In this document: in pieces, positions 1,877 to 41,244 of the stretch | How the letters are laid out: each line of letters opens with the position of its first letter | Numbering within the stretch: position 1 is the first letter of the stretch | Source: Vitrella brassicaformis CCMP3155 | Taxonomy: Eukaryota; Protista; Chromerida | Length of the DNA stretch: 53,824 bases | Assembly (NCBI GenBank): GCA_001179505.1 | Contig: CDMY01000546.1 | Coordinates: forward strand, 1 to 53,824 | Reading direction: 5' to 3' | The notes under the pieces: model-generated | Databases searched by the model: none | What the model was told of the DNA's origin: nothing | What the model saw: the letters and a program-made list of their open reading frames with translations, nothing else | Made by a program: the position numbers and the translations under genes

Positions 1877-1923
1877 GGTGGTGCTGACGAACGAGGGGAG
1901 AACGCGCTCGGGTGGATCCCTCG

Positions 1924-1931
1924 AGCTCGCA
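1924..1931 (-). promoter_or_regulatory. TGCGAGCT motif in the divergent spacer DUF1254/DUF2237
   Basis: agctcgca on the + strand. The same motif recurs in all six head-to-head spacers. Confidence 0.5.
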
Positions 1932-2011
1932 AGCTGGCCGCGAAACCGCCGCGAAGGAGGAGGCCACAAGGAGCTACGGGCAAGCGATTCCATCCACCAA
2001 TCGCAGCAACG

Positions 2012-2833
2012 ATGGTGTCCAAGCTCCTCCTCTGGGCCTTCCTGGCGCTGGCATGCCTCCTGACGTTCACTGGCGCCGCCGACGTCGGGGTCAGTGAGCA
2101 CGGGCAGAACGGGCTGCGTGCCCACCACACGGGGGTCCACTCCATCAAACTCAACGAGCAGCTGAAGGTACGGGCGAGGGCTGAGGAAAGCCACTTGCAC
2201 TGGAGAAAGGCCTTTGTTGCTGATGCATGGTTGCCTTGCCGCTTCTGGTTTGCCTGCAGGCATGCCCTGGTGAGACCCGTAAGGACGGAAAGTGCAACAA
2301 AGACGATACCCACCGCGTAGGCGCAGAGCTGACGTGGCACGTGTGATGGGCGGGCCTGTGGCATGCGTGTTGGGTGCATTGCAGGTATGTGCGCACATCA
2401 AGGGCACCGACTTCTTCGAGAAATCCGGCCAGGGGAGCTGGAGCGATACAATCCCCGAGCCCGGCTACTGGTATGGTACACACACACACACACACACACA
2501 CATCCATCACCCAACCCACCACTCGCAGCACAGCGCAGCACAGCCAGTCGACTGATGTGATGTGTGTCCTGTCCGCCCACCCAGGTGCATCTGCATCGGG
2601 CGGCTCGAGAAGTACCTCGAGAACGGCGGCAACCAGATCGCCGTCGACTGCGGGGCCACCTCCTTCGACCGCGTCTGCCAGGCCACGTAAGCAGCCCTTC
2701 TCTTGTCTTTGAGCCACTTATCCGTATGTGGGTGTTGGTGTGTGTGTGTGTGTGTGTCAGTGACGAGGGCATGAACACCCCCAAGGCCAAGGCTTTCGTA
2801 CTGGAGAAATGCCCCGAGAAGAAATGCCCCTAG
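2012..2833 (+). CDS. Small secreted cysteine-rich protein, DUF2237-like
   Basis: Five exons join in frame: MVSKLLLWAFLALACLLTFTGAADV (signal peptide)...K|ACPGETRKDGKCNKDDTHR|VCAHIKGTDFFEKSGQGSWSDTIPEPGYW|CICIGRLEKYLENGGNQIAVDCGATSFDRVCQAT|DEGMNTPKAKAFVLEKCPEKKCP*. The pattern R.DG.C..H.VCA...F...G...PG..WC.C...AT recalls DUF2237 (by eye, no HMM run). Confidence 0.7.
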
Positions 2834-3309
2834 AAGGAGGAGAAGATGTAGCAGGCCGGCCGCCGGCTTCAGGGCCAGGCGCGGCACCTGTACAGACGAA
2901 CAGATAGCACAGCACGGCACACACTGACCGCAAAGAGAGAGAGTGTGTGTGTGTGTGTGTAGCCGAACCCAATAGCCAGCCGACCGACAAGGGCAATGAG
3001 TTTCTGAATGCATGGCCTGTGTTGATATGTGCCCGGTATCAATCATACCCAATATTGATCATACCCCCAGCTCTCACGGCAGAATTTGATGTTCCATCGT
3101 TCCATCCATCCATCCATCCGATTTGTCCATGCATCCTGCCACATACGCAACACACACACACACACACACACCCAAGAGCCCTCGGGCACCCCCCACACGA
3201 ATGCGATGTCATGTAATGTAGTGGATGTCGTGCTGAGAGAGAGAAAGGGAGATGGCAGACAAGGGAAGAAGGGACCTTTCGGTATACACACACTGGAAGG
3301 AGGAGGAAG

Positions 3310-3348
<39 letters not shown>

Positions 3349-3389
3349 AGTGGGAGAGAGAGAGAGAGAAGGGGGGGGGGGGGGGGGGG
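3310..3389. repeat. (GA)n microsatellite followed by a 19-nt poly-G run abutting an assembly gap
   Basis: Directly visible: agagagag... tract, then G19 at 3371-3389. Confidence 0.9.
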
Positions 3390-3689
3390 NNNNNNNNNNN
3401 NNNNNNNNNNNNNNNNNNNNNNNNNNNNNNNNNNNNNNNNNNNNNNNNNNNNNNNNNNNNNNNNNNNNNNNNNNNNNNNNNNNNNNNNNNNNNNNNNNNN
3501 NNNNNNNNNNNNNNNNNNNNNNNNNNNNNNNNNNNNNNNNNNNNNNNNNNNNNNNNNNNNNNNNNNNNNNNNNNNNNNNNNNNNNNNNNNNNNNNNNNNN
3601 NNNNNNNNNNNNNNNNNNNNNNNNNNNNNNNNNNNNNNNNNNNNNNNNNNNNNNNNNNNNNNNNNNNNNNNNNNNNNNNNNNNNNNNNN
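3390..3689. other. Assembly gap (300 N)
   Basis: Run of N. The round size suggests a placeholder length. Confidence 0.99.
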
Positions 3690-4319
3690 AGGCATGCACA
3701 GGTAGGTATCTAGACCAGCGCAGAAATACAAACATAGATACGTGTGGACGTCTTAACGCTAATAAGGCGATGAATGATACATGGTTCGCCAGCCGAGAAA
3801 CCGCCATCTTGCTGGCCCGCCGGCATTCATTGCATTGCGCGCCACTGCCCTGGTTTTGAGCAGACGAGCACTCTCGCTTCCTGACGTTCCAGCCGGCCAA
3901 TACAACGCTCTCTCTCTCTCTCTCTGTGTGTCAGTCAGTGCCATCGATGGACAAAAGGGATGGGCTGCCCATCTCGCAGTCAGTCAGTTTTCCACCTCAA
4001 TCAACGGTACACACAGATACAAATACAGGTATGTATGTTGTGTAGGTATGTGACGGCCAGGTAGGGTAGCCACTTCAGGACTGATCCATCCGCCCGCCCG
4101 CAGGGCCCCCGGGGTCCTACCAGCTCTCACCGATTCCATTCCCGCCAAGAATACACAGTGAGTGGTCCATCCACCCATCCATCTCTTTCTCCGCAACGGC
4201 CAGCACACAGGGATGGGTGGGTAGGCATATAGTGGTGCACACACATTGCCTGCCCGAACAGAACCCCGCTAGGCAGCACCGGCAGGTCAGATCAGTGGGG
4301 GTGATATGTATATGTGTAG

Positions 4320-4619
4320 NNNNNNNNNNNNNNNNNNNNNNNNNNNNNNNNNNNNNNNNNNNNNNNNNNNNNNNNNNNNNNNNNNNNNNNNNNNNNNNNN
4401 NNNNNNNNNNNNNNNNNNNNNNNNNNNNNNNNNNNNNNNNNNNNNNNNNNNNNNNNNNNNNNNNNNNNNNNNNNNNNNNNNNNNNNNNNNNNNNNNNNNN
4501 NNNNNNNNNNNNNNNNNNNNNNNNNNNNNNNNNNNNNNNNNNNNNNNNNNNNNNNNNNNNNNNNNNNNNNNNNNNNNNNNNNNNNNNNNNNNNNNNNNNN
4601 NNNNNNNNNNNNNNNNNNN
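4320..4619. other. Assembly gap (300 N)
   Basis: Run of N, followed by a G-rich sequence. Confidence 0.99.
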
Positions 4620-4663
4620 GGGGGAGGGGTGGGGCGATAGGCCGATGTCTCATCGGTAGGTCG

Positions 4664-5605
4664 TCACTGGTCGTCATCGTTGATCTTGGGCGCCAGGAAG
4701 TACTTGAGCGACCCCAGGTTGGCCTTCTTCTCCTGAACGAAAGGAAGGAAGTCAACACACCGAACAACACAACACCACATCCACACCTACTGAGATAGAG
4801 ACCACTGAGATAGATACTTCCAGCGTTGATCCACCCCTCCCTCCCTCCCTCCCTCCCTGCGTGTGTGTGTGCATGCCAGGTGGGGTGGGGTGGGGTGGGG
4901 TGGGTGAGTCATACGCACTTACGTCGAGGTTGAATTGCACGACGAGGGGCTGATCCAGGTGCAGGCCGAGCTTGACCTCCTCGTTCAGGGGCGACGACTT
5001 GGCGAAGTACTGCCCGCACACAACACACACAGAGACACACAGAGAGAGACACACACAGAGGCAGCAGAATCGACTTGCGTGGACTGATGTGATGTCTGTG
5101 AGTGGGATTTGGCTGCCTGGAGGTATTTGGCGGCGAACTCGAGACGGAGCTCATCCTTGACAATCACCTTAACAGGGTTTTTCTGCACACACACACGCAG
5201 GGAGAGACAGATCATCTCTCTGTATCTGTGAGTCGTGTGGGTCTTGTCTGTCGATCGACCTCAGCGTATGGGTTATGCTTGAATAACATGTTGCCATGGC
5301 CCACATTCCCCTCCACCGAGGTGACGCCAAAGGCCACCTTGCCCTTCTTGCAGTCAATCGACACCACACACACACACACATACATATACGCAGAGAGAGA
5401 GCGAGAGGTCCGCATGGTCACCCAAGACGTGTGGCTCAGTGTGGGTGTGTAGGTGTGTAGGTGTGTGGTTGTGGGTGCGCGCAGGTACCGTTGTCGCCCA
5501 TGCCTCCGAGGTCCTTGACGGTTGACGCGAACTCCTTGCTGGCCATGGTGATCTGGTGGAGGAACACACACACGGCCACACACACACACACACACATGTG
5601 CCCAT

Positions 5606-5638
<33 letters not shown>

Positions 5639-6498
5639 GACTCACATCAACCCAGCAGTGTGGGCTGACCTCAGCTTGGAAGTCGGTGTCGGGTATGCCC
5701 AGGTGCTCGGCATCGATCTCCATCAGGTTCATCTCAAACTCACTCACACGGTCCTCACCTTGACAGACATAAAACAGACAGAGAGACAGACAGACAGACA
5801 GAACGAACACCCATGTGGGTGGCTGGGGGGATGGATGGGTGTGTGTGTGTGTGTGGATGGGGCGGGGCGGGGCGGGGCGCACTCACTGACTCACCCGACT
5901 CGAACTTGAAGGTAAGTCTCTGGGGGTCGTCGTCGCAGCTGAGCGTCACGGTGTCGTCGTTGCCACACAGCTTGAGGATCTGCGTGACGCTCTTCATGTT
6001 GAGCCCCAGAGTCATCTGCTGCTGGTCGCACCGGAACACCGTGAAGCAGTCCACCGTCATGTCCAAACACACCATGCTCTTCACACACAGCACAGCACAG
6101 CACAGGCACGCTAAGCCGACCGATCAATCATTCTTTTGTCACCCACCCACCACGTGTGAGCTGTCCATGGCCTGCAGCTTGATGCCGTCAGTCGACACGT
6201 CGACGTTCACCTGCACACAGACAGACAGTCACTCCACTCGTGCAGCCCACCCCACATCACATGCAGCATCTGGCGCGTGTGCATGCAGCGCATACGTGGT
6301 CAGTGATGAGCTCCTGCAGCATTGCACACCACAACAGCAGCACATCCATATCACATCACACAGACACCGACGTGCACATGCCATGGGCGAGGCGCATGTG
6401 GTGCATGTGTTGTGCGAAGCTGCGTCGTGTCGGCTCACCTTGAGTCCATTGAAGATGTCCTTGAGTGTCTTCCCTCGAGGTAACACCGCCTCAAACAT
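4664..6498 (-). CDS. PCNA: Proliferating cell nuclear antigen (sliding clamp), divergent, about 11 exons
   Basis: MFEAVLPRGKTLKDIFNGLK|ELITDH|VNVDVSTDGIKLQAMDSSHV|SMVCLDM..CD..MTLGLNMKSVTQILK..|..RVSEFEMNLMEIDAEHLGIPDTDF..|ITMASKEFASTVKDLGGMGDN|VSIDCKKG..|..FAAKYLQ|YFAKSSPL..PLVVQF..|..LGSLKYFLAPKINDDDQ*. The hallmark QAMDSSHV, interdomain-loop EHLGIP and KYFLAPKI motifs are present. Confidence 0.97.
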
Positions 6499-6678
6499 GA
6501 TACCTACCCGATGCACACGCTGCGCTGCCAGTGGGTGGTGTGCTGCGAGCAAAGCGCAACGAAGATCAACGCTCGAGATGGCAGATCCGAACACTCGCCC
6601 GTCTGACGTGACGCGAGAAATGGGAAAACACCTATCAGACGGTCGCAGCGGTGGCATAGGACACACTGTGAAACAGGA

Positions 6679-6686
6679 TGCGAGCT
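6679..6686 (+). promoter_or_regulatory. TGCGAGCT motif in the divergent spacer PCNA/RBBP6
   Basis: tgcgagct seen directly. Confidence 0.5.
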
Positions 6687-6721
6687 AGTGGCAAAAGGAC
6701 AAGGGGCAGAGCATTGCGAGG

Positions 6722-9056
6722 ATGTCGTCCCAGCTGCGCTTCAAGTTCCGCAACGAGAAGCGGTTCAAAGCCATCAAGGTCGACCTGCCCGCCTATGTGT
6801 CGGAGCTGAAGCACAAGATAGCGCAGCTACTCAAGGTGGACCTCCACGCCTTCGAACTCACCCTATCGGACCCCTCCACAAACGCAGTCCTCGATGACCA
6901 GCACTCCGTCACCCCCGCGGCCAATGGCGTGGCCACTGTGCTCATCTCCCGTGCGCCAAGGACCGAGGCAACCGCTCCCAGCCAGCCTGCAGCCCCTCCC
7001 ACCCTCCCTGTCGCCACATCTGCCGGCCAACCAGCCGACAGCGACAAGGCGGCCGCATCCGCAGCTGACCAACCACAGGCACAATCACAAGTACAGCCAC
7101 AACCGCCGCAGGAGGGCAAGGGCGAAGAGGACAACAGCAAAGATGAGGGCGGCGAGTACATGTCCCCGAGCCACAAGGAGGAGGACGAGCGGCTGAACGC
7201 CGTCATCAAGCAGACCCAGGAGCAGCAGCGGGGCTCCTGGACGGCCATTACCAACTTCCACCAGTACCAGCGAAACGAAAACCTTAAGTGGGTCAGGGGA
7301 GCAGCCGCACACAGGGACCACCACGCACCCGCACCGGCCTCCCAGCCGTCATCCGTCCCTGGGAGACCAGGGGGTGGGAGAGGAGGTGGCGGTCCACTGC
7401 CCGCCTTCCGGCACTCTGGTCAGAGTGCGCCGCCACCCAACTACATCTGCCACAAGTGCGGCAAGCCCGGGCACTACATCCAGGACTGCCCCTCCAAAGG
7501 CGACAAGGACTCGTTCGGCAACAAACACCAACGGCGCATCCGGCCGGCCGCCGGCATCCCCCGGAGTCTCCTGCAGTCGGTGGACAAGGATGAGGTCGAC
7601 AAGACCGACCAGCAGAATCTGCTCGTGCTGCCCGACGGCTCGTTCGCCGTCATGAAGGCCGTCGACAAGACCAAGACCGCCCAGGTGCTCGGCAAGTCCA
7701 TCGAGCAGCGGTTCACCGAACAGCTGGGGGGCGGTGGGGGGGAGGTGCAGCAGAGCTACGGGTGCCCCCTATGTGGCCGGCTGCTCCGTGAGGCGGTCAT
7801 CGTGGGCTGCTGCGGCACGTCCTACTGCCACGCTTGTGTCCACCAGCACCTCTACGCCGGCGGCAAGACTTGTCCAGCCTGCGAGCAGCCCCTCACACAC
7901 GCCGACGTCATGGAGAACTTCGCTCTGCGCGAGCAGATCAAGAGCCTCGTGAGCAAGCAGAGCGCCCCGGCTGACGGTGTGGCGGGAGCGGCTGCCGCTG
8001 GTGGTGGTGTCAAGGAGGAGGGTGAGAGGAAAGGTGTTGTCAAGAAGGAGGAGGTGGGGGGTGTGCGCGTCAAGAGCGAACCTCCGGATGAGACGAGGAG
8101 CCAGCAGCCCGCCCCACCACCACCACCACCACAGCAGCCGCAGCAGGTAGGTATCTGGGATGGGTGTGTGGAACCACTGTGGGTACATGTGCTTCTTAAT
8201 CTGTGTGGTCGTTCAGAGCGCTGCCATGCCTCGCGCACCGTCACCGTCACCGTCACCGGTGCAGGATTCGCTCATTCCTCCCCCTCCCCCAGACGTCCGT
8301 GGTCCCTCGAGCGATCGTCTCGCACCCCCATCAGAGCAGCAGCCTCACCCGTCGCGGTCATCGTCACGCTCACGCTCGCAGCCCGTGCAGCCGCCGCCGC
8401 CGCCCCCTCCCCATCCCTCCTCATACCACAAGGCCCCCTCGCCCCATCACACACAGCCAAACGGCGTGCGATTCCACCCCTACATGCCATCCCCCCAGCA
8501 GCAGCACCAGGCGAACGGCCACGTGTCATCGTCGAGTGGGAGCGGTCCGCCGATGCACCAGCCGATGCACCACCATGCGGCCCCCCCGCCACCCTTTGAG
8601 GTGCCGATGTACCCCAACGGTCAGCCGTTGAGTCGGCAGGACTTCGCTGCCTACCAGCAGGAGATGATCGAGCTGATGCGGGCCCAACACGAAAGGAAGC
8701 GACGCAAGAAGAAGAAGCGAAGGCGGCGGGAGAAGAGGGACAAGGAGAGACAGAAGCGCAAGGAGGAGAGCGGCGACGCTGGTGGTGAGGGGGACGCAGA
8801 GGGTGGTGGAGGTGGTGAGGATGAGCAGTCCAAGGCCGCCGCCGAGAGCAGCTCTGAGAGTGAGTCGTCGAGCAGCGACTCCGACTCGTCAGCTGACGAG
8901 CAAAAGGCAGCGGGAGGTGCCACCAAGATGGCCATCTTGCCACCGCCCCCATACATCCCCCCTTCAGCATATCATGATGTCCCCTACCCTCCGCCCGGTC
9001 CCCCCGGCCCCCCTCCGCTCCCCTATCCGCCCTACGACAACAGGAGAAGATACTGA
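6722..9056 (+). CDS. RBBP6: RBBP6/Mpe1-like protein (DWNN ubiquitin-like domain, CCHC zinc knuckle, RING), 2 exons
   Basis: N-terminal QLRFKFRNEKRFKAIKVD..VSELKHKI (DWNN); PPPNYICHKCGKPGHYIQDCP (zinc knuckle); RIRPAAGIPRSLL; RING CPLCGRLLREAVIVGCCGTSYCHACV..CPAC. One intron at about 8147-8217, then a Pro-rich and basic RKRRKKKKRRRR tail. Confidence 0.92.
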
Positions 9057-9640
9057 CTGACGCACGCACGAGCCGCTGTGTGTCTAGCTGAAGACGACAC
9101 GACCTGCTGGCTGCTTGGTTAGTAGATTGGTTAAAGTGAGAGATGAGAGACAGTCAGACAGACAGATGATTGGGTCGTTCGTTCCATTGTCAATGATATG
9201 CGGCCTCGTGGCACATCCATCACTCAGGCGGTCTGTGTGTCGGATTGACAGAAGGGGTGTAGCCAGTCGGCCAGCCATTGGGTGGGAGATTGTGCTTGTG
9301 ATTGATGCGTCGAGACCTGCTCACATGTATATCCTCTATCAACATTGTTGATGACGGTGGCGCAACACCTACCTACAGACACAGACTGTCTTTGGCGGCA
9401 AGTGCACCACAATCATTCCAATGGACGGACGTCTCGGCTGTGCGTGGTGTGCTTTGTTTGAAGAGACGTCTCTCTCGGTGAGTGTCCGTGTGGTGGTGCG
9501 TGGGTCTCTTTACTGCGTGGCGTGATGCATGAGTGAGTTGACTTTAATCATCTTTTTGGTATATATTAATGAGATCTGGTGTCTGTCAACTACACCGACA
9601 TTGAACACAGATCAGCCACACCATAAAACTCTGCTCTCAA

Positions 9641-11633
9641 TCATGGCAATGCATCTATTCTCGTGCTGTTGGCGAGGTCGACGGTGTCCTTCGCCGTGTC
9701 AGTCATCTCCTGCACACACACAAAGGCAATGACCGATGGATGGCCCACCCACCCACTCCACCGATGAGTGCAGTGCGGCCCCCACACACTCACCAGTGCC
9801 CATGTGTGGTCGGCCTCGTATTTGTTATCGTCGGTGCGGAAGCTGAATGTGTAGCAGTAGTGCTGGTCCCGACAAAACGGCTCAGCCGGACCTGAGTGAC
9901 AAAACACACACGTCCACACACGTCCAACCATCCAGAATCAATCAGGCAGCCTCCCTGTCGGTGAGCGAACCAACCGGTGATTGATGTGTTCCAGGTGGAG
10001 ATGTATTGCAAGTCAGGCTTGTTCGACACCAACAGATGCTCCTGCAGCCAACCAGCCAGGAGCAACACACAAGAGGGAATGCCCGGTGGTGCTGTCTCTC
10101 TCTGTCCAGTGCAGTGGATACGGACGGACAAGTGTCCCCCGCAGCCACGGGTTGTCCTGGAAGTTGAGTGTCTTGAGCCGATCCCACTGCACAGCACACC
10201 ATGAACAGGAAGAGAGAGACAGAAGCGCCTTAAGATGCACACATACATAACATACGTCTTTTGCGAAGTCAGTGGGCAGCGTGTCGTTGATGGCGTTGTA
10301 TGCGAGATTGAGATCCCGAAGGTTCCTCAGCTCATTCAAACTCCTGCAGACGGGACGGGTGGCTGGCTGTGGGGTGAGGCATCCCTCCCTCCCTCCCTCC
10401 CCTGCCTGTGTCCAGCTCACCCCCTGAGAGTTGCGATTGAGTTGCCCTGCAGCTCTAATGTCTCCAAATTCGTCAAGTTGCCTGACAGCATGGGTGGGTG
10501 AGAGGTTTTGGGTGAGAGACACGGAGTAGTGCAGGGTGATGTATGTGTGCAGACCGAGCGAGTCAGGGAGGCTGGCGACTTTGTTGTTGGCCAGCGAGAG
10601 GATCTCCATCTGGTGGGTGGCCGTCCCGAAGGCATCAGGCAAGTAACTGCCATCACGTCACGCACACACGGACAGACGCACACACCCGATGCCTCCCCCC
10701 ATGTGCCGAACAGCCAAGCCCACCCACTTGATGGAGTTTGATGAGACGTCGAGTACCCTCAGCTCAGTGGCGTCCTCAACACTCATGGGAATCGGACCCA
10801 CAATCTCATTCCTGTCAGACAGAGATATAGACAGGCACCAGACACATAATGCATTAGCTTTGACGCACACCCACCTCCCTCCCCCGCCGACGCACCGATT
10901 CTCATTGACGACGTTATTGAACTCTTGGGCCGTCGATGCGATGCACAGCCGACGCAAAAATCTGAACGCCCTGAAAAAGTCCAGTGGGAACCTGGCAGAC
11001 AGACAGACAGACGGACCCTTTGGTGGTTTCAGTCATGGTGGGCTTGGCGCATGCGCTTACGCTCCCCGAAGACGGTTGTCCACCAGCTCGATCTCGGTGA
11101 CGTACCCCTCGCCGTTGCACGTCACACCGTACCAATGCTCCTGACCGCACACAAGACAAGAATAACCAACACCTGCCCTCAGGCATGCGCCTCGACGGCC
11201 GCACCCTGCAGGGGTCTGAGTAGATGATGAACCCCTGTTGTATGGCCGTCCACCGCCTCTCCCAGCCCTCATTAACCCGCCAGTTGGGCCCGTCCATACT
11301 GCCAAAGAACTCCATCAGCATGTCCGTCTCACCGCCCCTCTCCTCAGCCTTGGCCTGGATGGCCGCCTCCTCCTGCGGCGTCGTCAAGCCACCGCCGAAG
11401 ATCTCCAGTGGCTGAAAGGCGAACTGCCGGGAGCAGCCCATGGGCACGGCGGTTGTGACGGGACAGGTGGCGTCGAAGGGCATCTTGGCCTTCTGCCCGC
11501 GGTGCCAGCTGCCGTCGGAGAGCAGCAGCCGGTGCTCGTCCTCCCGGAACACCTCGGCGGGCTCCGAGGGAAGCATTCTCAGTGCAAAGAGGGATAGAGA
11601 GGCGAGTATCGGCAGCCGTCTCGAAGGGCGCAT
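9641..11633 (-). CDS. Probably secreted plant-type leucine-rich-repeat protein (LRRNT cap plus LRRs, no kinase or TM domain)
   Basis: Hydrophobic N-terminus (MRPSRRLPILASLSLFAL); LRRNT_2-like cap LMEFFGSMDGPNWRVNEGW..DPCR|EHWYGVTCNGEGYVTEIELVDNRLRG; repeats LRVLDVSSNSI, MEILSLANNKVASLP, LETLELQGNSI, LRDLNLAYNAINDTLP and LKTLNFQDNPWLRGTL. The start could instead be Met at 11576. Confidence 0.82.
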
Positions 11634-11699
11634 CCCTCAAGCAGACGAGCAGAGAACGAACGCGGCCGAGAGAAGAATCCAGGCCAGAAAGGGAAGACC

Positions 11700-11707
11700 T
11701 GCGAGCT
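11700..11707 (+). promoter_or_regulatory. TGCGAGCT motif in the divergent spacer LRR/VPS2
   Basis: tgcgagct seen directly. Confidence 0.5.
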
Positions 11708-11759
11708 CGGAAGATCTCACGAAGTGCGGTTAAGCGTCTTGCGCAGAAGAGTCCTGAAG

Positions 11760-11886
11760 ATGGGCGAGGGACAGTCGAAATCTCTCAATGGTACGACACA
11801 CAAACAACGCAGACCCACTCTTCCCCTGCTGACCGCCTCCTTGTGCGGGTGTGTCTGTCTGTGTGTCTGTCTGTGTATCTGTCTGT

Positions 11887-11918
<32 letters not shown>

Positions 11919-13336
11919 CTTGTGTGTGCAGAGCAGCTGCGGAGCAACAAGCGTCAGATCAACCGGTCCATCCGGGAGCTGGACCGGGAGAGGATGCAGC
12001 TCGAGAACGGCGAGAAGAAGCTCATCGGCGACATCAAGACCATGGCCAACAAGGGACAAATGGTAGGTAGGACAACCAACAGAAGCCCTGCTTCACTAGA
12101 GCTGTGTGCGGTCGTTGCATCTCCGTGTGTTGGTGACGTTGGTTGACTGACTGACTGTGCGTTGTCTGCAGAGTTCGGTGAAGATCATGGCTCGTGATTT
12201 GGTCCGCACCCGCAAGTACAAGGCAAAGTTTTACGAGATGCGGTCGCAGCTGCAGGCCGTCAACCTGCGGCTGCAGACCGTCAAGTCCACACAGGCCATG
12301 ACCGAGTCCATGAAGGGCGTCACCAAGGTCTGCCTGCCTCTGGCATCCCACACAGACACACAGACAGACAGACAGACAGACAGACAGGTGGAGCGCTAGA
12401 CGGCACGTCGTGTGTGTGTGTGTGGTGTGGTTGGTTGGGTCGATCAGGTGATGGTGCGGATGAACAAGCAGATGAACCTGCCGTGTGAGCGTCAGATACA
12501 TGCCACGGCACACACACACAGAAAGGGAGGGAGGGAGGGAGGTATGTCTGCTTATCTATCTGTGTGTGATTGGTGTGTCAACTGGTGCACTCAGCGCTGA
12601 ACAAGATCATGCAGGAGTTCATGAAGGAGAACGAGAAGATGGGACTCACCGTACGCTACGCTGGGACCCACAGCACACACGCACACCCCTTCCCTTCCCT
12701 TCCTGCGTGTCTGTATTCCTGCCCTGCGCGTGTGTGTGCAGGAGGAGATGATGTCCGACGCCGTCGACGACGCCATGGCCGACACGGTCAGTCAGTCGAG
12801 AGGCAGGCAGGCACCTGGCAGTGGTTCGGTGCAGATGTGTGTGTGTGGTCTGTCTGTCTGTCTGTGTGTGTGTGTGTGTGTGGTGTAGACTGACGAGGAG
12901 GAGGAGGAGCGCATCGTGGCTCAGGTCCTCGACGAAATCGGAGTCGACCTTTCCGGACAGGTGAGTTAGTTGAGTGGCTGGGCTGGGCGGGCGGGCAAGA
13001 GAGACCGGGCGACGGCACACCAGGTACGCCACTCCTTTGTGTTCCTCTTTCAGTTGGCCGCTGCTCCGTCGGGTCAGCTTGCGGCGGCCCAACCGATGGC
13101 CGTCGACGCACAAGCCAGTAAGATCAATCAAGAAGCAGACACACAGAGATGAGATGCTCACACACGACTGACTGACTGAGTGAGTGTCGGGTGTTTTAAT
13201 GCCTGGCACTCACTGTGCGGGGTGTGTGTGTGTGTGTGTGCGGTGTGTGTGTGTGTGTGCGTCAGGTGCCCAGCCGATGGCTGTGGGTGAGATGGAGAAG
13301 TCCCTCGAGGACCGACTCAACAACCTCAAGAAATGA
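11760..13336 (+). CDS. VPS2: ESCRT-III subunit Vps2/CHMP2A (Snf7 family), 9 exons
   Basis: QLRSNKRQINRSIRELDRER..LIGDIKTMANKGQM|SSVKIMARDLVRTRKYKAKFYEMRSQLQAVNLRLQTVKSTQAMTESMKGVTK|VMVRMNKQMNLPS|LNKIMQEFMKENEKM..EEMMSDAVDDAM..EEEERIVAQVLDEIG, with the C-terminal MIM1 motif EKSLEDRLNNLKK*. Confidence 0.95.
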
Positions 13337-16990: not shown

Positions 16991-16998
16991 AGCTCGCA
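16991..16998 (-). promoter_or_regulatory. TGCGAGCT motif in the 70-bp divergent spacer MFS/RPP21-like
   Basis: agctcgca on the + strand. Confidence 0.5.
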
Positions 16999-27564: not shown

Positions 27565-27595
27565 TGCGAGCTTTTATGCGAGCTTGATGCGAGTC
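27565..27595 (+). promoter_or_regulatory. Triplicated TGCGAGCT motif in the divergent spacer RING/UBA3
   Basis: Exact copies at 27565-27572 and 27577-27584, and a near copy TGCGAGTC at 27588-27595. Confidence 0.55.
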
Positions 27596-27630
27596 GACTG
27601 TCGCCTGTTGCTTGTGCTTGATCCGTTTCT

Positions 27631-27654
27631 TCATTCATTCATTCATTCATTCAT
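27631..27654. repeat. (TCAT)6 microsatellite in the RING/UBA3 spacer
   Basis: tcattcattcattcattcattcat seen directly. Confidence 0.95.
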
Positions 27655-27699
27655 CGCCTCGCTGGGTCACTGGAGATCAAGAAGTGATCAAGTTTCAAG

Positions 27700-31287: not shown

Positions 31288-31320
<33 letters not shown>

Positions 31321-31870: not shown

Positions 31871-33741
31871 TTAGATGGGTGTGGGTGCGACGTCGACTAT
31901 GGTCCTGGTGGTATCGACGTAGGTGAGCAGGAGGGCCCCCGCGTGGTTCAGGACCTCGCACTCGCGCTTCTCGGATATCATGCGGTCGTCACAGCTGATC
32001 CTAAACACACACACACACCACCACACAGCCCGCATTACGCCCAATCGACCCACCCACCCCAGGCATCCGCCCGTCCTCTCACCATTTGTCGTGGCCGCGT
32101 CTGACGAATGCGCTGAAGTGCCCCACGTGGGCCTCCTCGCCGTGGTGGACCACCACCGACACGAGCTGGTAGCTGGGGGGCGGGGCCGGGGCGTTGTCAG
32201 GCTCGGCGAGGTGGGGGTGCGCCGCGCGCCAACGGGAGTACTCCTCCCACTTGTGACGCTCCTCATACCGCCACCTACACACACACACACACACACACAC
32301 GTATAGCCGCGCATGGTGGGGATGGTTGTGCTGGCTGGTCCGGCAGGCAGTGGCAGTGGCAGTGGGTCGGACCAGTCGAAGTTGAATTGGAGTTCTCGGC
32401 CGTACTCGATGACCTTGCCCGTCTTGATAGCCTGGAGCGCACCAAAACCCGTGCGCTTCAAGCTCAACACCAGGATCTGACAGACAGACACCCACCCCAC
32501 ACAAGCAGAGAGAGAAACGACACACATCACACATCACCTACTCTGCCTGTGTGGTGTGGCGTGTTGGCTGTCTGTCTGCGTCGGTTGCCTACGGGGGGCC
32601 AGGTCTCGACGAAGAGTTTGTGATAGATGTGCCGGTGCTTGGGGTCGGCGCGCAGGACCTCCTCCTCGTCGCGGTCCACCATGGTGCAGCAGATGGCGTC
32701 CCTGCAGGTGACGTGAGGCACAGGTGGTCAGTGGGATAATGGGTCTGTGTGCGTCTGTGAGCGTCTGTGTGTGTCTGTGTGTGTGTGTGTCTGTGCGGCT
32801 TGCGTACTCGATGGTTCTGATTGTGGTGTCGGTGATGGCGAGGTCGAGTGTCCAGAAGGCCTCGGGCTTCCACGTCAACTTGCTCTTGTCTGATGAATGG
32901 AGAGGGGTCAAGGCACACACACACACACAGACACAGACACACAGACACAAGTGGAGTGGCCAAACGAACGAACGAACGATTCTTGTGTCGGCGGATCGGT
33001 CGCTCGTTCACTCACTCACTCACCGTTGTCAGACTGCACGACCCGCGACACCACGCCGGCAAACAGCTTGCTGATGGGGGATGAGTTGATGTCCTGCAGA
33101 GTGTCGTTGCTGCACACACACACACACACACACACAGGCATGCACATGCACACCCCTGCCGATGCGCAGCTTGTCAAGGTGGTGTGTCTACGCGTGGTTG
33201 GCGGCTGGTGGATCGGTGGAAGACGACGACGGCTTGGATGGCTGTGGGGGCGGTGGCGACTGGGACGAGAGCCGCCCGAGGCTCTGACAATACAATCCAA
33301 TACAATCCAATGCACCACCAAGCGAGATATGCACTCACTCACGCACCCCTCGGCGGTAGATGCTCTCTTTGTGGAGGTTGTTGAGTAGGTCGAGAAGAAA
33401 CTCCTGAGGGTCAGACTGCACACCACCGAAGGCATGACCAGCTGCACACACCACACCACACCACACCACATCACATCATCTGACCTGACTGACACAGATG
33501 TGTTTGTTGTGTGCAGTGCAGTCATCTGACTGATCTGTGTGTGCAGGTGAGTGAGGTGACCTCTGCCACGGTGGTCGGGGTGGCTCTGGCTCTGGCTGTT
33601 CTCGAACTCCTTGATGACAGTCTCGAAGAAGGCCGAGGCGTAGAGGGCCGGGAGGGCGGTGTCCTCGCCAGCCAGCGACCCCTTCTCGGGACCCTTGTCG
33701 CTCAAACTCTCGGTATAAGCCACTTGCACATCTGTCAAACA

Positions 33742-33775
<34 letters not shown>

Positions 33776-36700
33776 TGGAGGTGCTGACGACTGTGCGCGT
33801 CTGTGTATGTGTGTATCGTCCGTCGCCTACAGTTGTCCCTGTCCTTGTGGTGCTCAAGGATGGGCTGGCAGATGTCCCGCAGCCTCTGGGTGCGCTCATG
33901 CTCCTTGTCGAGGGTCGCCTGGTTCTTGGCGCGGTAGAACTCGGCGAAGATCGCCCGAAAGGCCGCGTGGAAGGGGTAGTGCAGACGGTGCTGTTCCCTC
34001 CACTCACGGTCGTACTGCGCCGCATTGGCCAAACCCTGCCACACGCACACGCACACAACGGGGAGACACACAGAACCGATTTGTGTGCGTCTCTCGGTTG
34101 TGTGTGTGAGGGTCGAAATCTACCTCTGCCGATAGCGAGAGGTACTCTGCGAACCACTGTAGCGGCAGCATTCCCTGGATCAACTGACGGACACACCACA
34201 CCACACCACACCAAACCACACCACACCACACCACGTGTGTGTGTGAGTGTGTGTGTGTTGGTTGGGTGTTTGTTTACATACCGCATTGAGATAGCAGTAG
34301 TTCTTGATGTTTTCGAGGCCGCGGGGCTGCCACAGTGGCTCGCCATCGGGCAGCGCCTCGTCTTCATCCTACACACACACAGACACAACACAAGCGACGG
34401 GCGGATGGATGGATTGTGAGTGCATCGCTGCATGCCGGCTGTTTGCCTCACTCACTGACCCGTTTGAGGATGAGCAGCTCCTTCTCGTATTCGAGGATCT
34501 TGGACGATACCGTGGCCAGGTGCGGAAGCCAATGAGGGTTACAATCAACCGCCGCACTAGAGCGGCGCCGAACATATTGCTCAAACTGACCACACACACA
34601 CACACAGACAGAGCCAATACAGATGACACTCGGCGCCACAGACACACACCTGCCCCGCCAGAACTCACCAAGTGCACGCGCAGCCTCTCGTGGGGCTTGA
34701 GGTCGCGCAGTTCCATGGTGCGGGCATCCTTGAGGGCGAAGTAGAGGCCTCGTGTGATGACGCTGAACTGCCCCCCTCTCGCCATCAAGTTGCACTTGAG
34801 GCTGTCCGTCATCCAGTTGGTCGACAGCAGCCGCGGCTTCTTGGCGAACTCCATGTCGGCACGGCCCTCCCCGCCCCTCCCCCCTGCGGCGCCAGGGGCC
34901 ACCACGGCCGAGGGCGTGCCGGGGGGCGGACCCCAGACGGACCCAGATGACGTCGACTTGGGCGGCGGGGGCGAGGGACCGGGCAGAGACGAAGGCTTGA
35001 TGAGCGGCATTTGCGGCTGCACCACGCTGCCATCGCCGTACCCGTCCACGCGAATCATCCCGTGCGGCACAGTGTGACCGCTCGCACCGGTGGTCCAGGC
35101 CTCCTCCAACTCGTGAGATGAAGTCCCCGCATCGCCCCCCTGCTGCCGTCCAGTGGCGATGCCCCTGCCCGCGCCACGCCTGTCACCCATGCGGCCTGCT
35201 GGCGGCGGAAGGACCTTGAGCTCAGCGGGCATCGGTGGGGCGGGGTATGGCCCGGCCGGCTTGGGGTCCACACGCAGGATTTGGGGGGGCGGGTGCGATG
35301 GGGCGACGACCGACGAGGCCGGTGTGCTGACGGGGGGTGTGAGGGAGGGCTCCGGTCGGTCATCTCTCTCTCTGGAATGCCTCACGACTCGCACGAAGAA
35401 GTGACAGAGTGGCGAGAGTTGTGGGAAGTCGTAGAGCTCGAGCTTGAACCACTTGGCCTTGCGGCCGTTCCAGTCGAGCTTGACCACGATGTTGTCCCAC
35501 GTGTGCGGCACCCCGTCCCTCGCCTCGGCCACGTCCTTGTCCTCGGCCGCCTCACACGCCGTCGCCACCGCCTCAGCCAAACCCTGCATGAACCGCTCGT
35601 CGTCTCCACTCACATACGTCAACAGGGCGCTGGGGGCCGACACAGATGAGGAGGAGGAGGAGGACGCAGCAGCAGCGGCGATGGCGGCCTGGCTGGTCTT
35701 GCGTGCCTTGTTGTGGTCCTCACAGGCCCTCTTGATGCGCGAGAGGTACCAGCTGACGACCGACCGCTTGATGTGGACGCCGCCCTCGGGGCTCTTGGTG
35801 TTGTCGAGCAGGCGGGGGTGCTGGATGAACCAGATGTCGGTGTCGTCGTCTGCGTCGCTGTCGGAGCACCGCCCGCCGTACTTGGTCACCGGCCGGGGCG
35901 ACGAGGCACAGGAGCCGGGCGGCACCTCCTCTCTCGGCGGCGCCTCACGCGCCGGTCTGGCCCTCGACTTGTCCCTCTTGTCCTCCTTGCCACCCGCTTC
36001 GGGCTTGGGCTTGGGGCGATGGACGAAGCGGCTGAGCTGCTCGCTCTCGCTTATGTCGTCCTCCTCCTCGTTGTCTTGCTCGTCATTGTCCTTGTCGGAC
36101 GCACCCTGGTCGCCCTCGACCTCCTCGGGTGGCGGGGCCGCAGCGGCCGCTGCTGCCTGGCGTCGCTTGTTCTCCTCCTCCTTCTCCTTCTGCTTGCGGG
36201 CCTTGCGGGCCTTCCTGTCCTTCTTGGTCTCCTCGTCGGACAGCTCGACGCCGAGTGCCTTCTGGGCCTCGCGGGCTCGCAGCTCGGCCGCCTGCTGCTT
36301 CTCCCTCACGGCCTGTTCATCCTTGGCGTGGTCGCCCCTGCCCTTGTCCTTCTCGGCCTTGCGCTGCTTCTTCTTCTGGGCCTTCTCGTGCTTCTCGCGC
36401 AGCTCCTCACGCTTGACCTCTGAGCGGTTCTTGGCCTTGGACTCCTCACGAGACTCCTCGGGCGACACGCCCATGGCGATCTTCGCCAACACCTCTGAAC
36501 ACACGAACCAACGAACAACGAGGGAGGGAGGGGAGGGACACCGCACAGCCATACATCCATCGTGTTGTGCCGTATTGTGGTGTGGGTGGGGCTGCGTGGC
36601 GTGGTGGAGGGGCGGGTGGGTACCCACCGGTGTCCTTTGTGAGTGAGCCCTTCTCAGAGGTGAGCCTGTTGATTCCCTCGGTGGCTTTCTGTATCTTGTC

Positions 36701-39700
36701 GTCGAGGTCGGCGATGCTGGCGGCGCTCAAGCCCTTCTTGGCCCGATCTCTCTTGAGTCTGTTGAGTTGCTCCTGCGCAGCCGGCAGCAGCTTCTCGATG
36801 ACTTCAAGCCTCTTCTTCTTGATCTCCAACTCTTTCACACGATGCGATTGGTCGTCCTGCAGCACAACGACAGACAGACAGACAGACAGACACTCATTGG
36901 TGGATGGGCTGTGTGTGTGTTGTGTGGTGCACACCATTCGTCTGTTGTCGTCCGAGTGGTCGTCGCCCATGTCGCTGCCGCCGACCATCAACTGCCAGGT
37001 CCTCTCGCCACCACCGCCACACTCCCTTGCCTGATCCTGGAAATCCTGAACACACACACACACACACACACGACACACGACACGTGAGCGATGCGCGTGA
37101 TGCCCTGCCCCCCCTCTGTGCAAACATGTCTGTCTGTCTGTGTGTGTGTGTGTGTGTCTGTCTGTCTTTCTTTCTTTCTTTCTTTCTCAGTGGCTGGCTC
37201 ACTGACTGACCATATGGAGTATTTTGTTGATGATGAGTTTGACGAGTGTGAGGAGGATCTTCTTGGTCTCGACCTTGGAGCGGCCGAAGGGCAGCTTCTT
37301 CTTGCGCCACTTCTCGCCCTTGCACTTGAGGGCGTCCTCCGCCCACTCCTCGAACTGCCGGCGGCCGCTCTCCTCGTCCTGGGCGCTGGGCTCCTTGGGG
37401 GCCGTCCCCGTCGCATTGAGAAACATGTCGACGTTGCCCTTCCCCATGTCGGCAATGACGCGACGCAAGTGCAAGTTGATGATGCGGCTCCAGTTCTGCT
37501 CGGCCCGTTGGCGCGCCTCCCGCACGCGCTGCTTCATGATCTCGGTGGCAGCCTCGATGGCCTCGGGCATGTTCCACTGTTGGTCGATGTAGTTGGTGGC
37601 GTGGTGGCAGATGGTCTTGATGAGCTCGCTGTCCTCCTGCTCGACCATCATGCGATCCACGACCTGCCCAAGGTCCTCAAGGTACTGCCGCTCCTCCTCC
37701 TTGGCCGCCTGCTCCTTCCGGCTCGTCTTGGTCTTGCGGCTGCTCAGCACCTCGCTCTCCTCATCGGCCTCTTCACGCTCCTTGTCCTTGTCCTTGTCAT
37801 CATCCTCGCCACGAACGACCGCAGACGACGCCGCCCCCCTCCCGCCGCTGCCGTTCCTCCTGCCGTCCTGCGTGCGTTTCTCGTGGTAGTTGGCGACGAG
37901 GCGCTTGACGTGGTCGTGGAGCTGCACCTGCTGGTTGTGCGCCCGCTCCATGTGCAGGCGGTTGTTGAACGCCTCGGGGTGGAAGCGCCGCATGGAGGCC
38001 TCCAGCGTGATGCACTGCCGGATCCGACGCGCACCCTCAGCGTCGTCCTCGGAGTCGTTGACGGCCTCGCGCATGTCCGGGTGGAGATGGATGTGGCGAT
38101 TGAGGCTGCGGAGGTGGTCACGGTGAGGGGGCAGGCGGCCGTCCCGGTCACGCAGGTTCAGGAAGTCCTCAAGTCCATCGTCATCATCGCTCTCCGTGTC
38201 GTCCCCTCCGTCCCCGTTCTCATCATCATCAGAATAGTGGGGGGAATCGTCGGGGCGCCTCTCGGGCTGCCGCCGCCCGCTGGGGGGACGGGCCTCATTC
38301 TCTGTCTCGGGGACCGTCGACGTCTCGTCCGGGGCGTCGGCGGCGTCGTGGTACTCGTTGTTGTCATTCTCGAAATCGTCGAAGGCGTCATCGAAGGGGT
38401 CATGGAACTCCTCGCCAACGCCAACGCCAACGCCACCGCCACCACCCACACCCGACCGGCGCTGCCCTGCGCGGTCTGGCCGACTGCCCAACACCCCGCC
38501 GCCCATCGAGGGCAGGAAGTTGCCCACCGATGTGTAGGGTGCTGCACGGGGGTAGATGGTGGGGGGTGCGGGAGGGACAGGCCGTGTGGGGATGGGGTGA
38601 GGGAAGGCAGGCAGGCCCGGTGCTCTCGTCGACCCCAACAGAGGGTCCATCCCCGATTGGCTGTCGGGAGTGTCGTTGACCTCATCCTCAGGGTGCCAAT
38701 CTGGACCATACAGATCCTCGGGGGGGCCGTCCAGACGCGACAGTGACTCGTTCGCTTCTGGAGGCCTGATCCTCGCCGAATGGATCATGGTGTCCACCAG
38801 CCGTGGAATATCCCTATCCGAATGGATCATGGTGTCCACGAACCGTGGAAGATCCCTCTGCGGGTTCCCGTGCATGAGCGCCGCTTGGAGGGTTCCCCTC
38901 GGCCGGTCTACCAGCTGGGCCGCAAAGCGAATGAGTTCTTCCGCGGTTTCAGGATCAATGGCCCGAGCAGCCTCCGAGGCCTCCCTCCTGTCCCTCCCCC
39001 GCCTCTCGTCAGACCGGTCGCGACGAGTGCCATCAGCACGACCCGTACGCTCGCCCACGAGACTCCCATTTTGAGCTGTGGGTGATGCCCTCTGAGCTCC
39101 TGTGGGTGATGCGCCCGTATCCCCGCCAGCAGGTGAGCCAGGAGGGGGCTGGGCCGGACGCCCCAACAGGAGGGGGATGTGGGGGGCAGACTCCTCCTCC
39201 TCCTCCGCCGTTGAAGACTCAACTGGTGGCGGTGCGGCGGGCGTCTCCTGCGCAGACTTGCTGCCGCGGCCCTGAGGATGCTTGCCGTTGCTGTCCTGGC
39301 GGAGCTTGCCTCGCAGATTCATGTCGAATGAGGATGCCGCGATCGAGATGCGAGCGCCCTCGCCCCTGCGCGTCGACCCCGAGCCATTTCGCGCAGACGA
39401 GGGGGCTGCTCGATCTCCCGTTCCGTTGATCAGGCACGAGCCCGCCTCGTCGGCCTTCTTGCCTACTGCTGCCGCCCCGTCGCTGGGCCGTTTGGCGCGA
39501 CTGGAGATGCCGACATCGTCGTCAGGCTCGCTATCGAGCTCCTCACGGCCCGACATGTCATGTCTGGACGGATGGGCTGGCCCATGGTGGGCGCCGCCAC
39601 CATCCATCCCCACGACATAGACCTGCTCCGTCACGGGACCACCCCGGCTGACGGCAGGGACGTGGGCCGCCTTGTCATCCGAGGCCGGCCGCTTGGGTGC

Positions 39701-40966
39701 AAACGTATCGGCCGGTGCTGCGATGTTGTGCGAGGCCATGGCGGCCGTGATAGCCGGCGGCGACCTGTCGTCATCAGCGGCTCGATACGAGCGCTTGCCC
39801 GTCACTGCCCGGTCTGTCGGCCGCCCGGCCTCCCGCTTCAGGCCGGCCTCAGTGCTGATTGTGGATGCGGCAGGGAGGCCGCTGAGCATGCTGGAGGGGC
39901 TGGAGAGGCTGGCGCCTGAACGGGACGTGCCCTCGCCGTCAATGGTCGACAGGTGAGGTGAGACGAGCGACTCCAGCTCCTCTGAGGGGTGGCGGTGGGC
40001 CCTCGGAGGCTCCAACTGCAACAATGACTCATCTTCAGCTACAGGACCGCGCGGCCGCCCGACAGCAGGCAGCTGCGTCTCGACTACGGCACTCGACTCG
40101 ACAGGGGTCTGCTCCTCGTCCTCCTCCACTCCATCACCCTCACCCGCACCCTCTCCCGCCTCTCCTGTGGCGTCCTTCCGCTCGTTGGGCTGCTCCTCCT
40201 CGCTGGCACCGAGTGGATGCGGGGAGAGTGAGGCGCTTGCGTCTGGTGCGTGTGGTGGGGCGGGGGAGGGGGGAGTTGCCGCCTCGTTGACGGTGTCTTG
40301 TGGGGGGATGTCGTCACTGTCCGTCACGTCCATACTATCGGGTGCATCGTCAGCACGCGGCTCGCCCATTAACTCAGCTCCTCCGACCGCACCTGCACCA
40401 CACCACACCACACCACATCACAAGACACAGTCAATGTGTGACCGACGGTGTCTGCCGCACGTGTGTGTCGGTCACCCACCTTCTGAGAGGGCCATGGCGT
40501 CCGTCTGCCGCTCCTGTTCAGGATGCACCTCTTGGTCCAGCTGGTCGAGCAGAGGGAGGGCGGGCGGCGCCGGCTCACCAGTCTCAACCAATGGGGAGGA
40601 AGAGTCGGGACCAGGACCAGACCCATCACCGACACCAAACGACTCGTCCTGGTCATCGGACTCCTCCTCGTCATCCTCCTCATCTTCGTCCGCGTCGTCG
40701 CCGTCACTGCTGGTGTCCTCCTCGCCGTGTGCCCCGTCGTCGTCCGCCTCAGCCGCCACATCATCGATGCCCTCATCTTCATCCTCCTGCTGATCTTCCC
40801 TGCCATCTGTGTCTGTGTGCGCGTAGGGCTGTGGCGTCACTGTGGCATCTGGTGGCTGGGCGGGGATGTGCTCCTGCGTCTCCTCGTCGGACTCGTCGGA
40901 CGAGTCGAGGTCCTCATCGCCCTCGCCGTCCTCCGCTATCGCATCCGCATGGTCGGCGAAATGCAT
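31871..40966 (-). CDS. Giant ubiquitin-specific protease (peptidase C19), C-terminal catalytic domain after about 2,000 aa of mostly disordered sequence
   Basis: Cys box QPRGLENIKNYCYLNA (exon at about 34300-34368); QSDPQEFLLDLLNNLHKE; PEAFWTLDLAI; QILVLSLKR; His box YQLVSVVVHHGEEAHVGHFSAFVRRGHDKW|ISCDD. Upstream exons (ORFs 34369-36627, 36567-37123 region, 37199-40411, 40472-41095) splice in frame. The start Met is uncertain. Confidence 0.86.
38776..38859. repeat. 42-nt tandem duplication inside USP coding sequence
   Basis: ccgaatggatcatggtgtccaccagccgtggaatatccctat followed by ccgaatggatcatggtgtccacgaaccgtggaagatccctct. Encodes DLPRFVDTMIHSDR-DIPRLVDTMIHSAR on the minus strand. Confidence 0.9.
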
Positions 40967-41201
40967 GCCGGCAGCAAACAATACCTCAACCAGACACACT
41001 ACCTGCGCCAAGGAAGGACAGAGGAACAGCCGTGCGCATGACGTGACGCTCGTATGTGATGGCCACGGAAAATAACAACTGGCTTTGCGTACCAATCAAA
41101 CCGGCGCGGCATTCGGCTACTTCAACGTCGGGGCTCGTCGGGAGCACAACACCCTAGTAAGTTCCCCGTAAAAGTCGGTTCTGTGGGGGGTTTTGCATGT
41201 G

Positions 41202-41209
41202 AGCTCGCG
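41202..41209 (-). promoter_or_regulatory. CGCGAGCT variant motif in the divergent spacer USP/channel
   Basis: agctcgcg on the + strand (7/8 match, GCGAGCT core intact). Confidence 0.45.
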
Positions 41210-41244
41210 AAGAGGAAATCGCGTCTTATCTTTGTCCCTTTTCC

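What the first reader, a model, noticed from the sequence alone, without database searches (positions are those of the whole stretch)
1877..41244. The same GCGAGCT element sits in all six head-to-head spacers: a candidate bidirectional-promoter code
Seen: TGCGAGCT at 1924-1931(-), 6679-6686(+), 11700-11707(+), 16991-16998(-), 27565-27572 and 27577-27584(+), and CGCGAGCT at 41202-41209(-). The six spacers total only about 1 kb. A rough estimate for this 7-mer on both strands at about 60% GC is about 0.2 expected copies in 1 kb, against 7 observed; the motif was picked after the fact, so this overstates significance. It occurs in either orientation, as expected for a bidirectional element. It differs from the apicomplexan GAGAC and TGCATGC motifs, and I do not know it as a described element. 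Inference: a binding site for a general activator or nucleosome-excluding factor at housekeeping promoters; an ApiAP2 factor is one possibility.
Basis: partly seen in the sequence, partly recalled or inferred. Interest (0 to 1): 0.85.

Follow-up and report, generated by a model that had tools for sequence, protein, structure and literature searches.

The report
Shared promoter word between back-to-back genes
In the alga Vitrella brassicaformis, a free-living relative of malaria parasites, the seven-letter DNA word GCGAGCT sits in nearly every short gap between two genes that point away from each other, so it is probably an undescribed protein-binding site of these shared promoters.

Summary
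The window is the whole contig CDMY01000546.1 of Vitrella brassicaformis CCMP3155. All seven reported copies are at the stated places and strands.

The window holds nine copies, about what its composition predicts (8.0). The signal is therefore purely where the copies sit: seven lie in six head-to-head spacers totalling about 1.05 kb.

I tested the word, fixed in advance, on two other annotated Vitrella contigs. It lay in 4 of 9 head-to-head spacers, including all three short ones.

Pooled over 116 kb:
- Head-to-head spacers have 13 copies in 5.5 kb; everything else has 10 copies in 111 kb.
- All 9 spacers of 278 bp or less carry it, against 1 of 6 spacers of 473 bp or more and 0 of 9 tandem spacers.
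- One-mismatch variants are not enriched.
- It is the top 7-mer in an unbiased scan and beats all 500 shuffles.
- The apicomplexan motifs GCATGC and GAGACGC, an E2F-like word and TATA are not enriched.

It is a real, highly specific promoter-associated element.

This scan has noted the same word before on other DNA of this genome: at least 20 first-reader notes and one follow-up. I found no paper that names it.

The parts
1924..1930 (-). GCGAGCT copy (ttGCGAGCTcg) in spacer 1877-2011 (135 bp). It lies 47 nt from the minus-strand ATG at 1876 and 81 nt from the ATG at 2012.
   Evidence: Right gene annotated. Left gene inferred from a DUF1254 match on the minus strand.
6680..6686 (+). GCGAGCT copy in spacer 6499-6721 (223 bp), between a PCNA/Rad9-like gene (-) and an RBBP6-like DWNN/zinc-knuckle/U-box gene (+). 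It lies 35 nt upstream of ATG 6722.
11701..11707 (+). GCGAGCT copy in spacer 11577-11759 (183 bp), between an LRR gene (-) and a Snf7-family gene (+). It lies 52 nt upstream of ATG 11760.
16991..16997 (-). GCGAGCT copy in the 70-bp spacer 16957-17026, between a sugar-transporter gene (-) and an Rpr2 gene (+). It lies 34 nt and 29 nt from the two start codons.
27565..27593 (+). Short tandem array (period 11-12, 2.5 copies) with two exact GCGAGCT copies (27566, 27578) and a third degenerate one. It sits in spacer 27537-27699 if the minus gene starts at ATG 27536.
   Evidence: Gene starts come from my own model. The alternative ATG 27638 would make this coding sequence.
41202..41208 (-). CGCGAGCT copy in spacer 40967-41244 (278 bp), between a very large minus-strand gene and a multi-repeat Ion_trans channel gene (+). 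It lies 36 nt upstream of ATG 41245 in the opposite orientation.
37623..37629 (-). Background copy inside coding sequence of the large minus-strand gene. The same codons occur in the paralogue at L003:12987. Not part of the element.
41894..41900 (-). Background copy inside the ion-channel gene, just past its first exon ORF. Not in a spacer.

Best explanation
GCGAGCT (consensus T-GCGAGCT-T-R) is a genuine, sequence-exact cis-element of the compact divergent promoters of Vitrella brassicaformis. It most likely works as the recognition site of one sequence-specific DNA-binding protein. That protein would mark the shared promoter, keep it accessible, and so allow transcription to start outward on both sides. 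This would explain why a single copy, in either orientation, serves two genes whose start codons lie only 70-280 bp apart.

Shown: the location bias, the exactness of the word, the dependence on spacer length, and the lack of conserved flanks.

Inferred: protein binding, action on both genes, and any role in nucleosome exclusion or start-site choice.
For: - Positions confirmed.
- Pooled density: 13 copies in 5481 bp of head-to-head spacers, against 10 in 110,906 bp elsewhere. For TGCGAGCT the counts are 8 against 1.
- Replication with the motif fixed in advance, on CDMY01000077.1 and CDMY01000231.1: 6 copies in 4 of 9 head-to-head spacers where about 0.6 are expected. All three short spacers (113, 224 and 262 bp) carry it.
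- An unbiased k-mer scan ranks it first at K=6, 7 and 8.
- No dinucleotide shuffle reaches the observed sharing.
- One-mismatch variants are not enriched (3.6 against 2.7 per kb), as expected for a specific binding site rather than a composition effect.
- Flanks are not conserved, even upstream of three paralogous genes, so it is not a repeat or mobile element.
- Both orientations occur, usually as a single copy per spacer.
- The public genome paper reports an excess of closely spaced head-to-head genes in chromerids but describes no motif (PMC4501334).
Against: - No binding, accessibility or transcription-start data exist for any promoter that carries the motif.
- In 8 of 10 spacers the copy lies only 20-52 nt from the nearest start codon. 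In 6 of 9 short spacers it points toward that nearer gene. A transcribed, strand-specific leader or initiator element would fit this equally well.
- The two Vitrella transcript contigs I could fetch have 5' leaders of 99 and 361 nt. If leaders of that length applied here, the motif would be transcribed.
- It is absent from 5 of 6 long head-to-head spacers and from all 9 tandem promoters, so it is not needed by every promoter.
- Six of the nine tandem spacers come from one motif-poor region, so that contrast is confounded by region.
Confidence: 0.6

Rival explanations
1. The word is a directional element of one gene of each pair. It would be an initiator-like start-site motif or a transcribed 5'-leader element acting on the RNA, not a shared DNA site for both genes.
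For: The word is not a palindrome. It lies 20-52 nt from the nearest ATG in 8 of 10 spacers. It points at the nearer gene in 6 of 9 short spacers, with one tie. The 40 nt downstream in motif orientation are purine-rich (mean 0.60 against 0.51 upstream; 0.70-0.80 at the three L003 sites), like a sense-strand leader. No ATG lies between the motif and the start codon in the four cases I read.
Against: There is one copy for two genes. The partner genes and all 9 tandem promoters lack it, so it cannot be a general initiator. In at least two spacers it points at the farther gene. The orientation bias of 6 of 8 is not significant.
Confidence: 0.25
2. The motif is a by-product of which genes lie there. 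It would be a regulon site for a class of conserved housekeeping genes that happen to be packed head-to-head, and not tied to bidirectionality as such.
For: Spacers with the motif flank mostly conserved genes: PCNA-like, RBBP6-like, Snf7, Rpr2, Fcf1/Utp23-like, a sugar transporter. The motif-poor region on CDMY01000077.1 holds mostly genes without Pfam domains.
Against: 9 of 9 short spacers carry it whatever the gene function, including lineage-specific genes without domains (L003 16865-17088, window 40967-41244). The sample is small.
Confidence: 0.12
3. Chance, or after-the-fact selection of a word in GC-rich spacers.
Against: Replication on independent contigs, the look-elsewhere shuffles, and about 25-fold enrichment (about 160-fold for the 8-mer).
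Confidence: 0.01

Closest known systems
gCATGCa promoter motif of Toxoplasma gondii (Markus et al. 2021, PMC7854901)
   Same: It is a short word found in a large share of promoters of a related alveolate (44% of start-site windows). It lies in the nucleosome-depleted region, its factor is unknown, and the genome has many bidirectional gene pairs.
   Different: The sequence differs. GCATGC and CATGCA are not enriched in Vitrella head-to-head spacers. The Toxoplasma motif was placed about 82 nt upstream of mapped starts, whereas no start data exist here. The Vitrella word is tied to short divergent spacers.
Factor sites over-represented in animal bidirectional promoters (GABP/ETS, NRF1, YY1; the TCTCGCGAGA element), cited from my own knowledge
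   Same: They are short words concentrated in TATA-less, CpG-rich divergent promoters and act in either orientation. TATAAA is absent from the Vitrella spacers too.
   Different: The words and proteins are unrelated. In animals several motifs share the work, whereas here a single heptamer covers 9 of 9 short spacers.
Yeast general regulatory factor sites (Reb1, Abf1, Rap1), cited from my own knowledge
   Same: This is the proposed mode of action: one sequence-specific protein opens a nucleosome-free region from which two genes diverge.
   Different: Nothing about chromatin was tested here, and no homologous factor was identified.
ApiAP2 binding motifs (for example the Cryptosporidium set, PMC4117751)
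   Same: They are 6-8 bp words bound by single AP2 domains, and the family is expanded in this lineage.
   Different: No published AP2 word containing CGAGC, GCTCG, GAGCT or AGCTC was found in that paper's text.

Membership tests
Shared cis-element of bidirectional promoters | Concentrated in spacers between divergent genes relative to other sequence | tested here: met
   2.37 per kb in head-to-head spacers against 0.09 per kb elsewhere, replicated on two other contigs
Shared cis-element of bidirectional promoters | Works in either orientation, one site for two genes | tested here: inconclusive
   Both orientations occur and most spacers have a single copy. Whether it acts on both genes was not testable.
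Shared cis-element of bidirectional promoters | Fixed position relative to transcription starts, within an accessible region | not testable with these tools
The transcript collection scans found nothing.
Initiator / core-promoter start-site element | Present at each transcription start, strand-specific | tested here: not met
   Usually one copy per gene pair. It is absent from 9 of 9 tandem promoters and from 5 of 6 long head-to-head spacers.
Apicomplexan gCATGCa / GAGACGC promoter motifs | Same word, enriched upstream of genes | tested here: not met
   GCATGC is at 0.55 per kb in head-to-head spacers against 0.47 in genes. GAGACGC has 0 copies in head-to-head spacers.
ApiAP2 target site | Bound by an AP2 domain in vitro or in vivo | not testable with these tools
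   No binding data. No matching word in PMC4117751.
Dispersed repeat or mobile-element fragment | Similarity extends beyond the core into the flanks | tested here: not met
   The flanks of 13 sites share only T at -1, T at +8 and R at +9. Upstream regions of three paralogues do not align.
Known RNA family in the spacers | Match to an Rfam model | tested here: not met
   No Rfam match at gathering score anywhere in the window

The most novel reading that the evidence does not exclude
A single exact heptamer could be the near-universal organiser of ultra-compact bidirectional promoters in a chromerid, with start codons as little as 70 bp apart. One lineage-specific factor, possibly an ApiAP2 protein, would bind it. 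This would be a simple promoter grammar in the closest free-living relatives of apicomplexan parasites, one that differs from every motif known in the parasites.
Probability: 0.3. Interest if true: 0.75.

Novelty: new member of a known kind. Interest (0 to 1): 0.5.

Why it matters
Almost nothing is known about how chromerid algae start transcription, although they are the reference point for how apicomplexan gene regulation evolved. A word present in every short divergent promoter sampled is a concrete, testable handle.

- It can be used as bait to identify the factor.
- It can serve as a marker to correct gene starts in the annotation.
- It is a candidate minimal promoter part for building expression tools in these algae.
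- It shows that the prevalent promoter words of Toxoplasma and Cryptosporidium are not shared with Vitrella.

The finding is not unique to this window. The same word has been noted many times across this genome by this scan.

Tried and rejected

**Transcripts.**
- The look-up of encoding contigs showed that two JGI samples (3300017148 and 3300017297) hold Vitrella transcript contigs 100% identical to the genome. Both belong to promoters without the motif.
- I tried to fetch transcripts of motif-bearing genes from metagenome contigs with IUPAC-merged patterns.
- A three-gene pattern found nothing.
- A five-target pattern that included a positive control also found nothing. That collection therefore does not hold these contigs.

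**More Vitrella loci.**
- All three homology searches returned only four protein ids, and the representative search returned three.
- I could walk along contigs only through rare single-exon genes.
- Three guesses at single-exon products were not on record. The right half of the window therefore rests on my own gene model.

**Cross-species test.** The only non-Vitrella locus obtained, Logan contig L006 from an unknown organism, has compact head-to-head genes but no copy of the motif in its spacers. No Chromera sequence could be reached.

**Rejected readings.** I rejected a repeat or mobile element, a known RNA family, a composition artefact, and equivalence with GCATGC, GAGACGC, E2F-like or TATA elements.

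Full report
**Origin and gene map**

The window is the complete 53,824-bp contig CDMY01000546.1 of Vitrella brassicaformis CCMP3155, assembly GCA_001179505.1. The public gene calls for positions 1-19,056 are:

| Position | Strand | Gene |
|---|---|---|
| 2012-2833 | + | no domain |
| 4664-6498 | - | PCNA/Rad9-like |
| 6722-9056 | + | RBBP6-like |
| 9641-11576 | - | LRR |
| 11760-13336 | + | Snf7 |
| 13982-16956 | - | sugar transporter |
| 17027-18498 | + | Rpr2 |

An unannotated minus-strand gene with a DUF1254 domain lies left of 1877.

I could not obtain public calls for the rest of the window. A codon-usage score trained on annotated genes, together with Pfam hits, gives this layout:
- a minus-strand gene ending at ATG 27536 (or 27638);
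- a plus-strand gene from ATG 27700;
- a very large minus-strand gene from about 31.9 kb to ATG 40966;
- a multi-repeat Ion_trans channel gene from ATG 41245 to at least 47.7 kb.

**The observation**

There are two further copies. One is in coding sequence that a paralogue conserves (37623). The other is inside the channel gene (41894).

The total of nine matches the shuffle expectation of 8.03, so the window has no excess of the word. What is unusual is that seven of nine copies fall in six head-to-head spacers that sum to 1052 bp, about 2% of the window.

The two 300-N gaps lie in a tail-to-tail interval and are flanked by (GA)n and poly-G. They touch nothing used here.

**Is it more than chance?**

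The word was chosen after the fact, so I ran three tests.

1. *Unbiased k-mer scan.* I scanned annotated head-to-head spacers against the remaining sequence. GCGAGCT and TGCGAGC rank first by number of spacers at K=6, 7 and 8.
2. *Look-elsewhere control.* In 500 dinucleotide-preserving shuffles of the 15 spacers, the most widely shared 7-mer occurs in 5-6 spacers as a rule and never in more than 9. GCGAGCT is in 10. For the nine short spacers the null maximum is 5 and the observed value is 9.
3. *Replication with the word fixed in advance.* I fetched CDMY01000077.1:253-39297 and CDMY01000231.1:91887-116865 with their gene calls. There, 6 copies lie in 4 of 9 head-to-head spacers (4.4 kb). Against that, 8 copies lie in 59.6 kb of other sequence. 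The three short spacers (113, 224 and 262 bp) all carry it.

Pooled over 116 kb:

| Region class | Length (bp) | GCGAGCT copies | Density or share |
|---|---|---|---|
| Head-to-head spacers | 5481 | 13 | 10 of 15 spacers |
| Genes | 87,616 | 9 | 0.10 per kb |
| Tail-to-tail spacers | 18,196 | 1 | 0.05 per kb |
| Tandem spacers | 5094 | 0 | 0 of 9 spacers |

TGCGAGCT occurs 8 times in head-to-head spacers and once elsewhere.

**Anatomy**

- The core is exact. One-mismatch variants are no more frequent in head-to-head spacers than in genes (3.6 against 2.7 per kb).
- Outside the core only T at -1, T at +8 and a purine at +9 are favoured.
- The flanks do not align, even upstream of three paralogous genes that all keep the word.
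- Copies are usually single. Two spacers carry short tandem arrays: window 27565-27593, and a 30-bp repeat with three copies on CDMY01000077.1.
- Presence depends strongly on spacer length. All 9 spacers of 70-278 bp have the word, against 1 of 6 spacers of 473-851 bp (Fisher p = 0.002).
- In 8 of 10 spacers the copy lies 20-52 nt from the nearest start codon.
- In 6 of 9 short spacers it points toward that nearer gene, with one tie. This bias is not significant.
- The tightest case is 16957-17026. The word sits in the middle of only 70 bp between two start codons.

**What it probably is**

An exact, short, flank-independent word confined to compact divergent promoters is best explained as the binding site of one sequence-specific protein that serves the shared promoter. 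That it acts on both genes, and that it does so by keeping the region open or by placing the start sites, is inference.

The main rival is a directional initiator or transcribed leader element of one gene of each pair. The closeness to start codons and the purine-rich sequence downstream of several copies fit that reading. One copy per pair and the absence from all nine tandem promoters argue against a general initiator.

The tandem comparison is weakened because six of those nine spacers come from one motif-poor region. That region consists mostly of genes without domains. This also leaves room for a housekeeping-regulon reading.

**Transcription starts**

These could not be examined.

Two JGI transcript contigs of Vitrella were reachable through single-exon genes, and they match the genome at 100% identity. 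Both belong to promoters without the motif. One leader is 99 nt. The other is 361 nt and contains an 83-nt intron.

Pattern scans for transcripts of motif-bearing genes found nothing. A positive control included in the second scan also failed.

**Comparison with what is known**

The genome paper reports an excess of closely spaced head-to-head genes in both chromerids but gives no motif (PMC4501334).

Full-text searches for the word, its complement and its extended forms found only two papers on unrelated subjects. Searches on chromerid or Vitrella promoters found nothing relevant.

The nearest published analogue is gCATGCa, present at 44% of Toxoplasma promoters about 82 nt upstream of mapped starts, with no known factor (PMC7854901). 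That word, GAGACGC, the E2F-like TGGCGCCA and TATAAA are not enriched in Vitrella head-to-head spacers.

**Earlier notes of this scan**

At least 20 first-reader notes on other contigs of this genome report the same word in divergent spacers. One follow-up (s1-080131) reached the same reading for an extended 13-base form. I treat these as leads, not evidence. The extended form (TGCGAGCTTAG...) fits 3 of my 13 sites.

What this report adds is:
- a test on annotated independent loci;
- the look-elsewhere control;
- the exactness of the core;
- the dependence on spacer length;
- the absence from tandem spacers;
- the negative result for the apicomplexan motifs.

**Verdict**

The mechanism is inferred. 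This is a new promoter word of a familiar kind, already seen repeatedly by this scan in this genome.

Noticed in passing
window 1-1876 (-): A minus-strand gene with a DUF1254 domain (ORF 962-1450, E 2.8e-18) and a plausible first exon starting at ATG 1876 is missing from the public gene calls for this contig.
   Followed up: partly
window 27536 / 27638 (-): There are two in-frame candidate start codons for the minus-strand gene. The upstream one would turn the tandem motif pair into codons 19-25. A (TTCA)6 microsatellite sits at 27630-27654.
   Followed up: partly
window 31874-40966 (-); L003:10001-14979; L004: The very large minus-strand gene has Vitrella-only paralogues (P0004, 57% identity; P0005) and no Pfam domain. 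P0004 and its neighbour gene at L003:15382-16864 share an N-terminus beginning MG...DFIHR, which suggests N-myristoylation.
   Followed up: partly
L002:8840-8915 (CDMY01000077.1): A 30-bp tandem repeat (TGCGAGCTTGATAGCTTGCGAATGGACGCG, about 2.5 units) carries three motif copies in a 473-bp head-to-head spacer, next to a run of G and a GCATGC.
   Followed up: partly
head-to-head spacers of window, L003, CDMY01000077.1: The second-tier enriched words GCAGATC and GCCGAGA each occur in 5 of 11 spacers (about 8-10-fold). GCCGAGA lies next to GCGAGCT at L003:9900 and about 30 nt upstream of it at window 11701.
   Followed up: no
L008 (JGI 3300017148), L010 (JGI 3300017297): Two JGI records hold spliced Vitrella transcript contigs identical to the genome. 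L010 shows an 83-nt intron inside a 361-nt 5' leader, so some long head-to-head spacers are mostly leader. L008 fuses two convergent genes' transcripts.
   Followed up: partly
window 3390-3689 and 4320-4619: Both 300-N gaps follow (GA)n or poly-G runs. The annotated minus-strand gene ends only 45 nt after the second gap, so its 3' end may be incomplete.
   Followed up: partly
L006 (Logan SRR22824308 contig, 9.4 kb, 56% GC): A contig from an unknown organism has intron-free, tightly packed head-to-head genes (spacers of 70, 266 and 167 bp), including an RBBP6-like gene. GCGAGCT is absent from those spacers.
   Followed up: partly
window 41245-47735 (+): Three separate Ion_trans matches along one plus-strand gene suggest a multi-repeat voltage-gated-type cation channel.
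   Followed up: no
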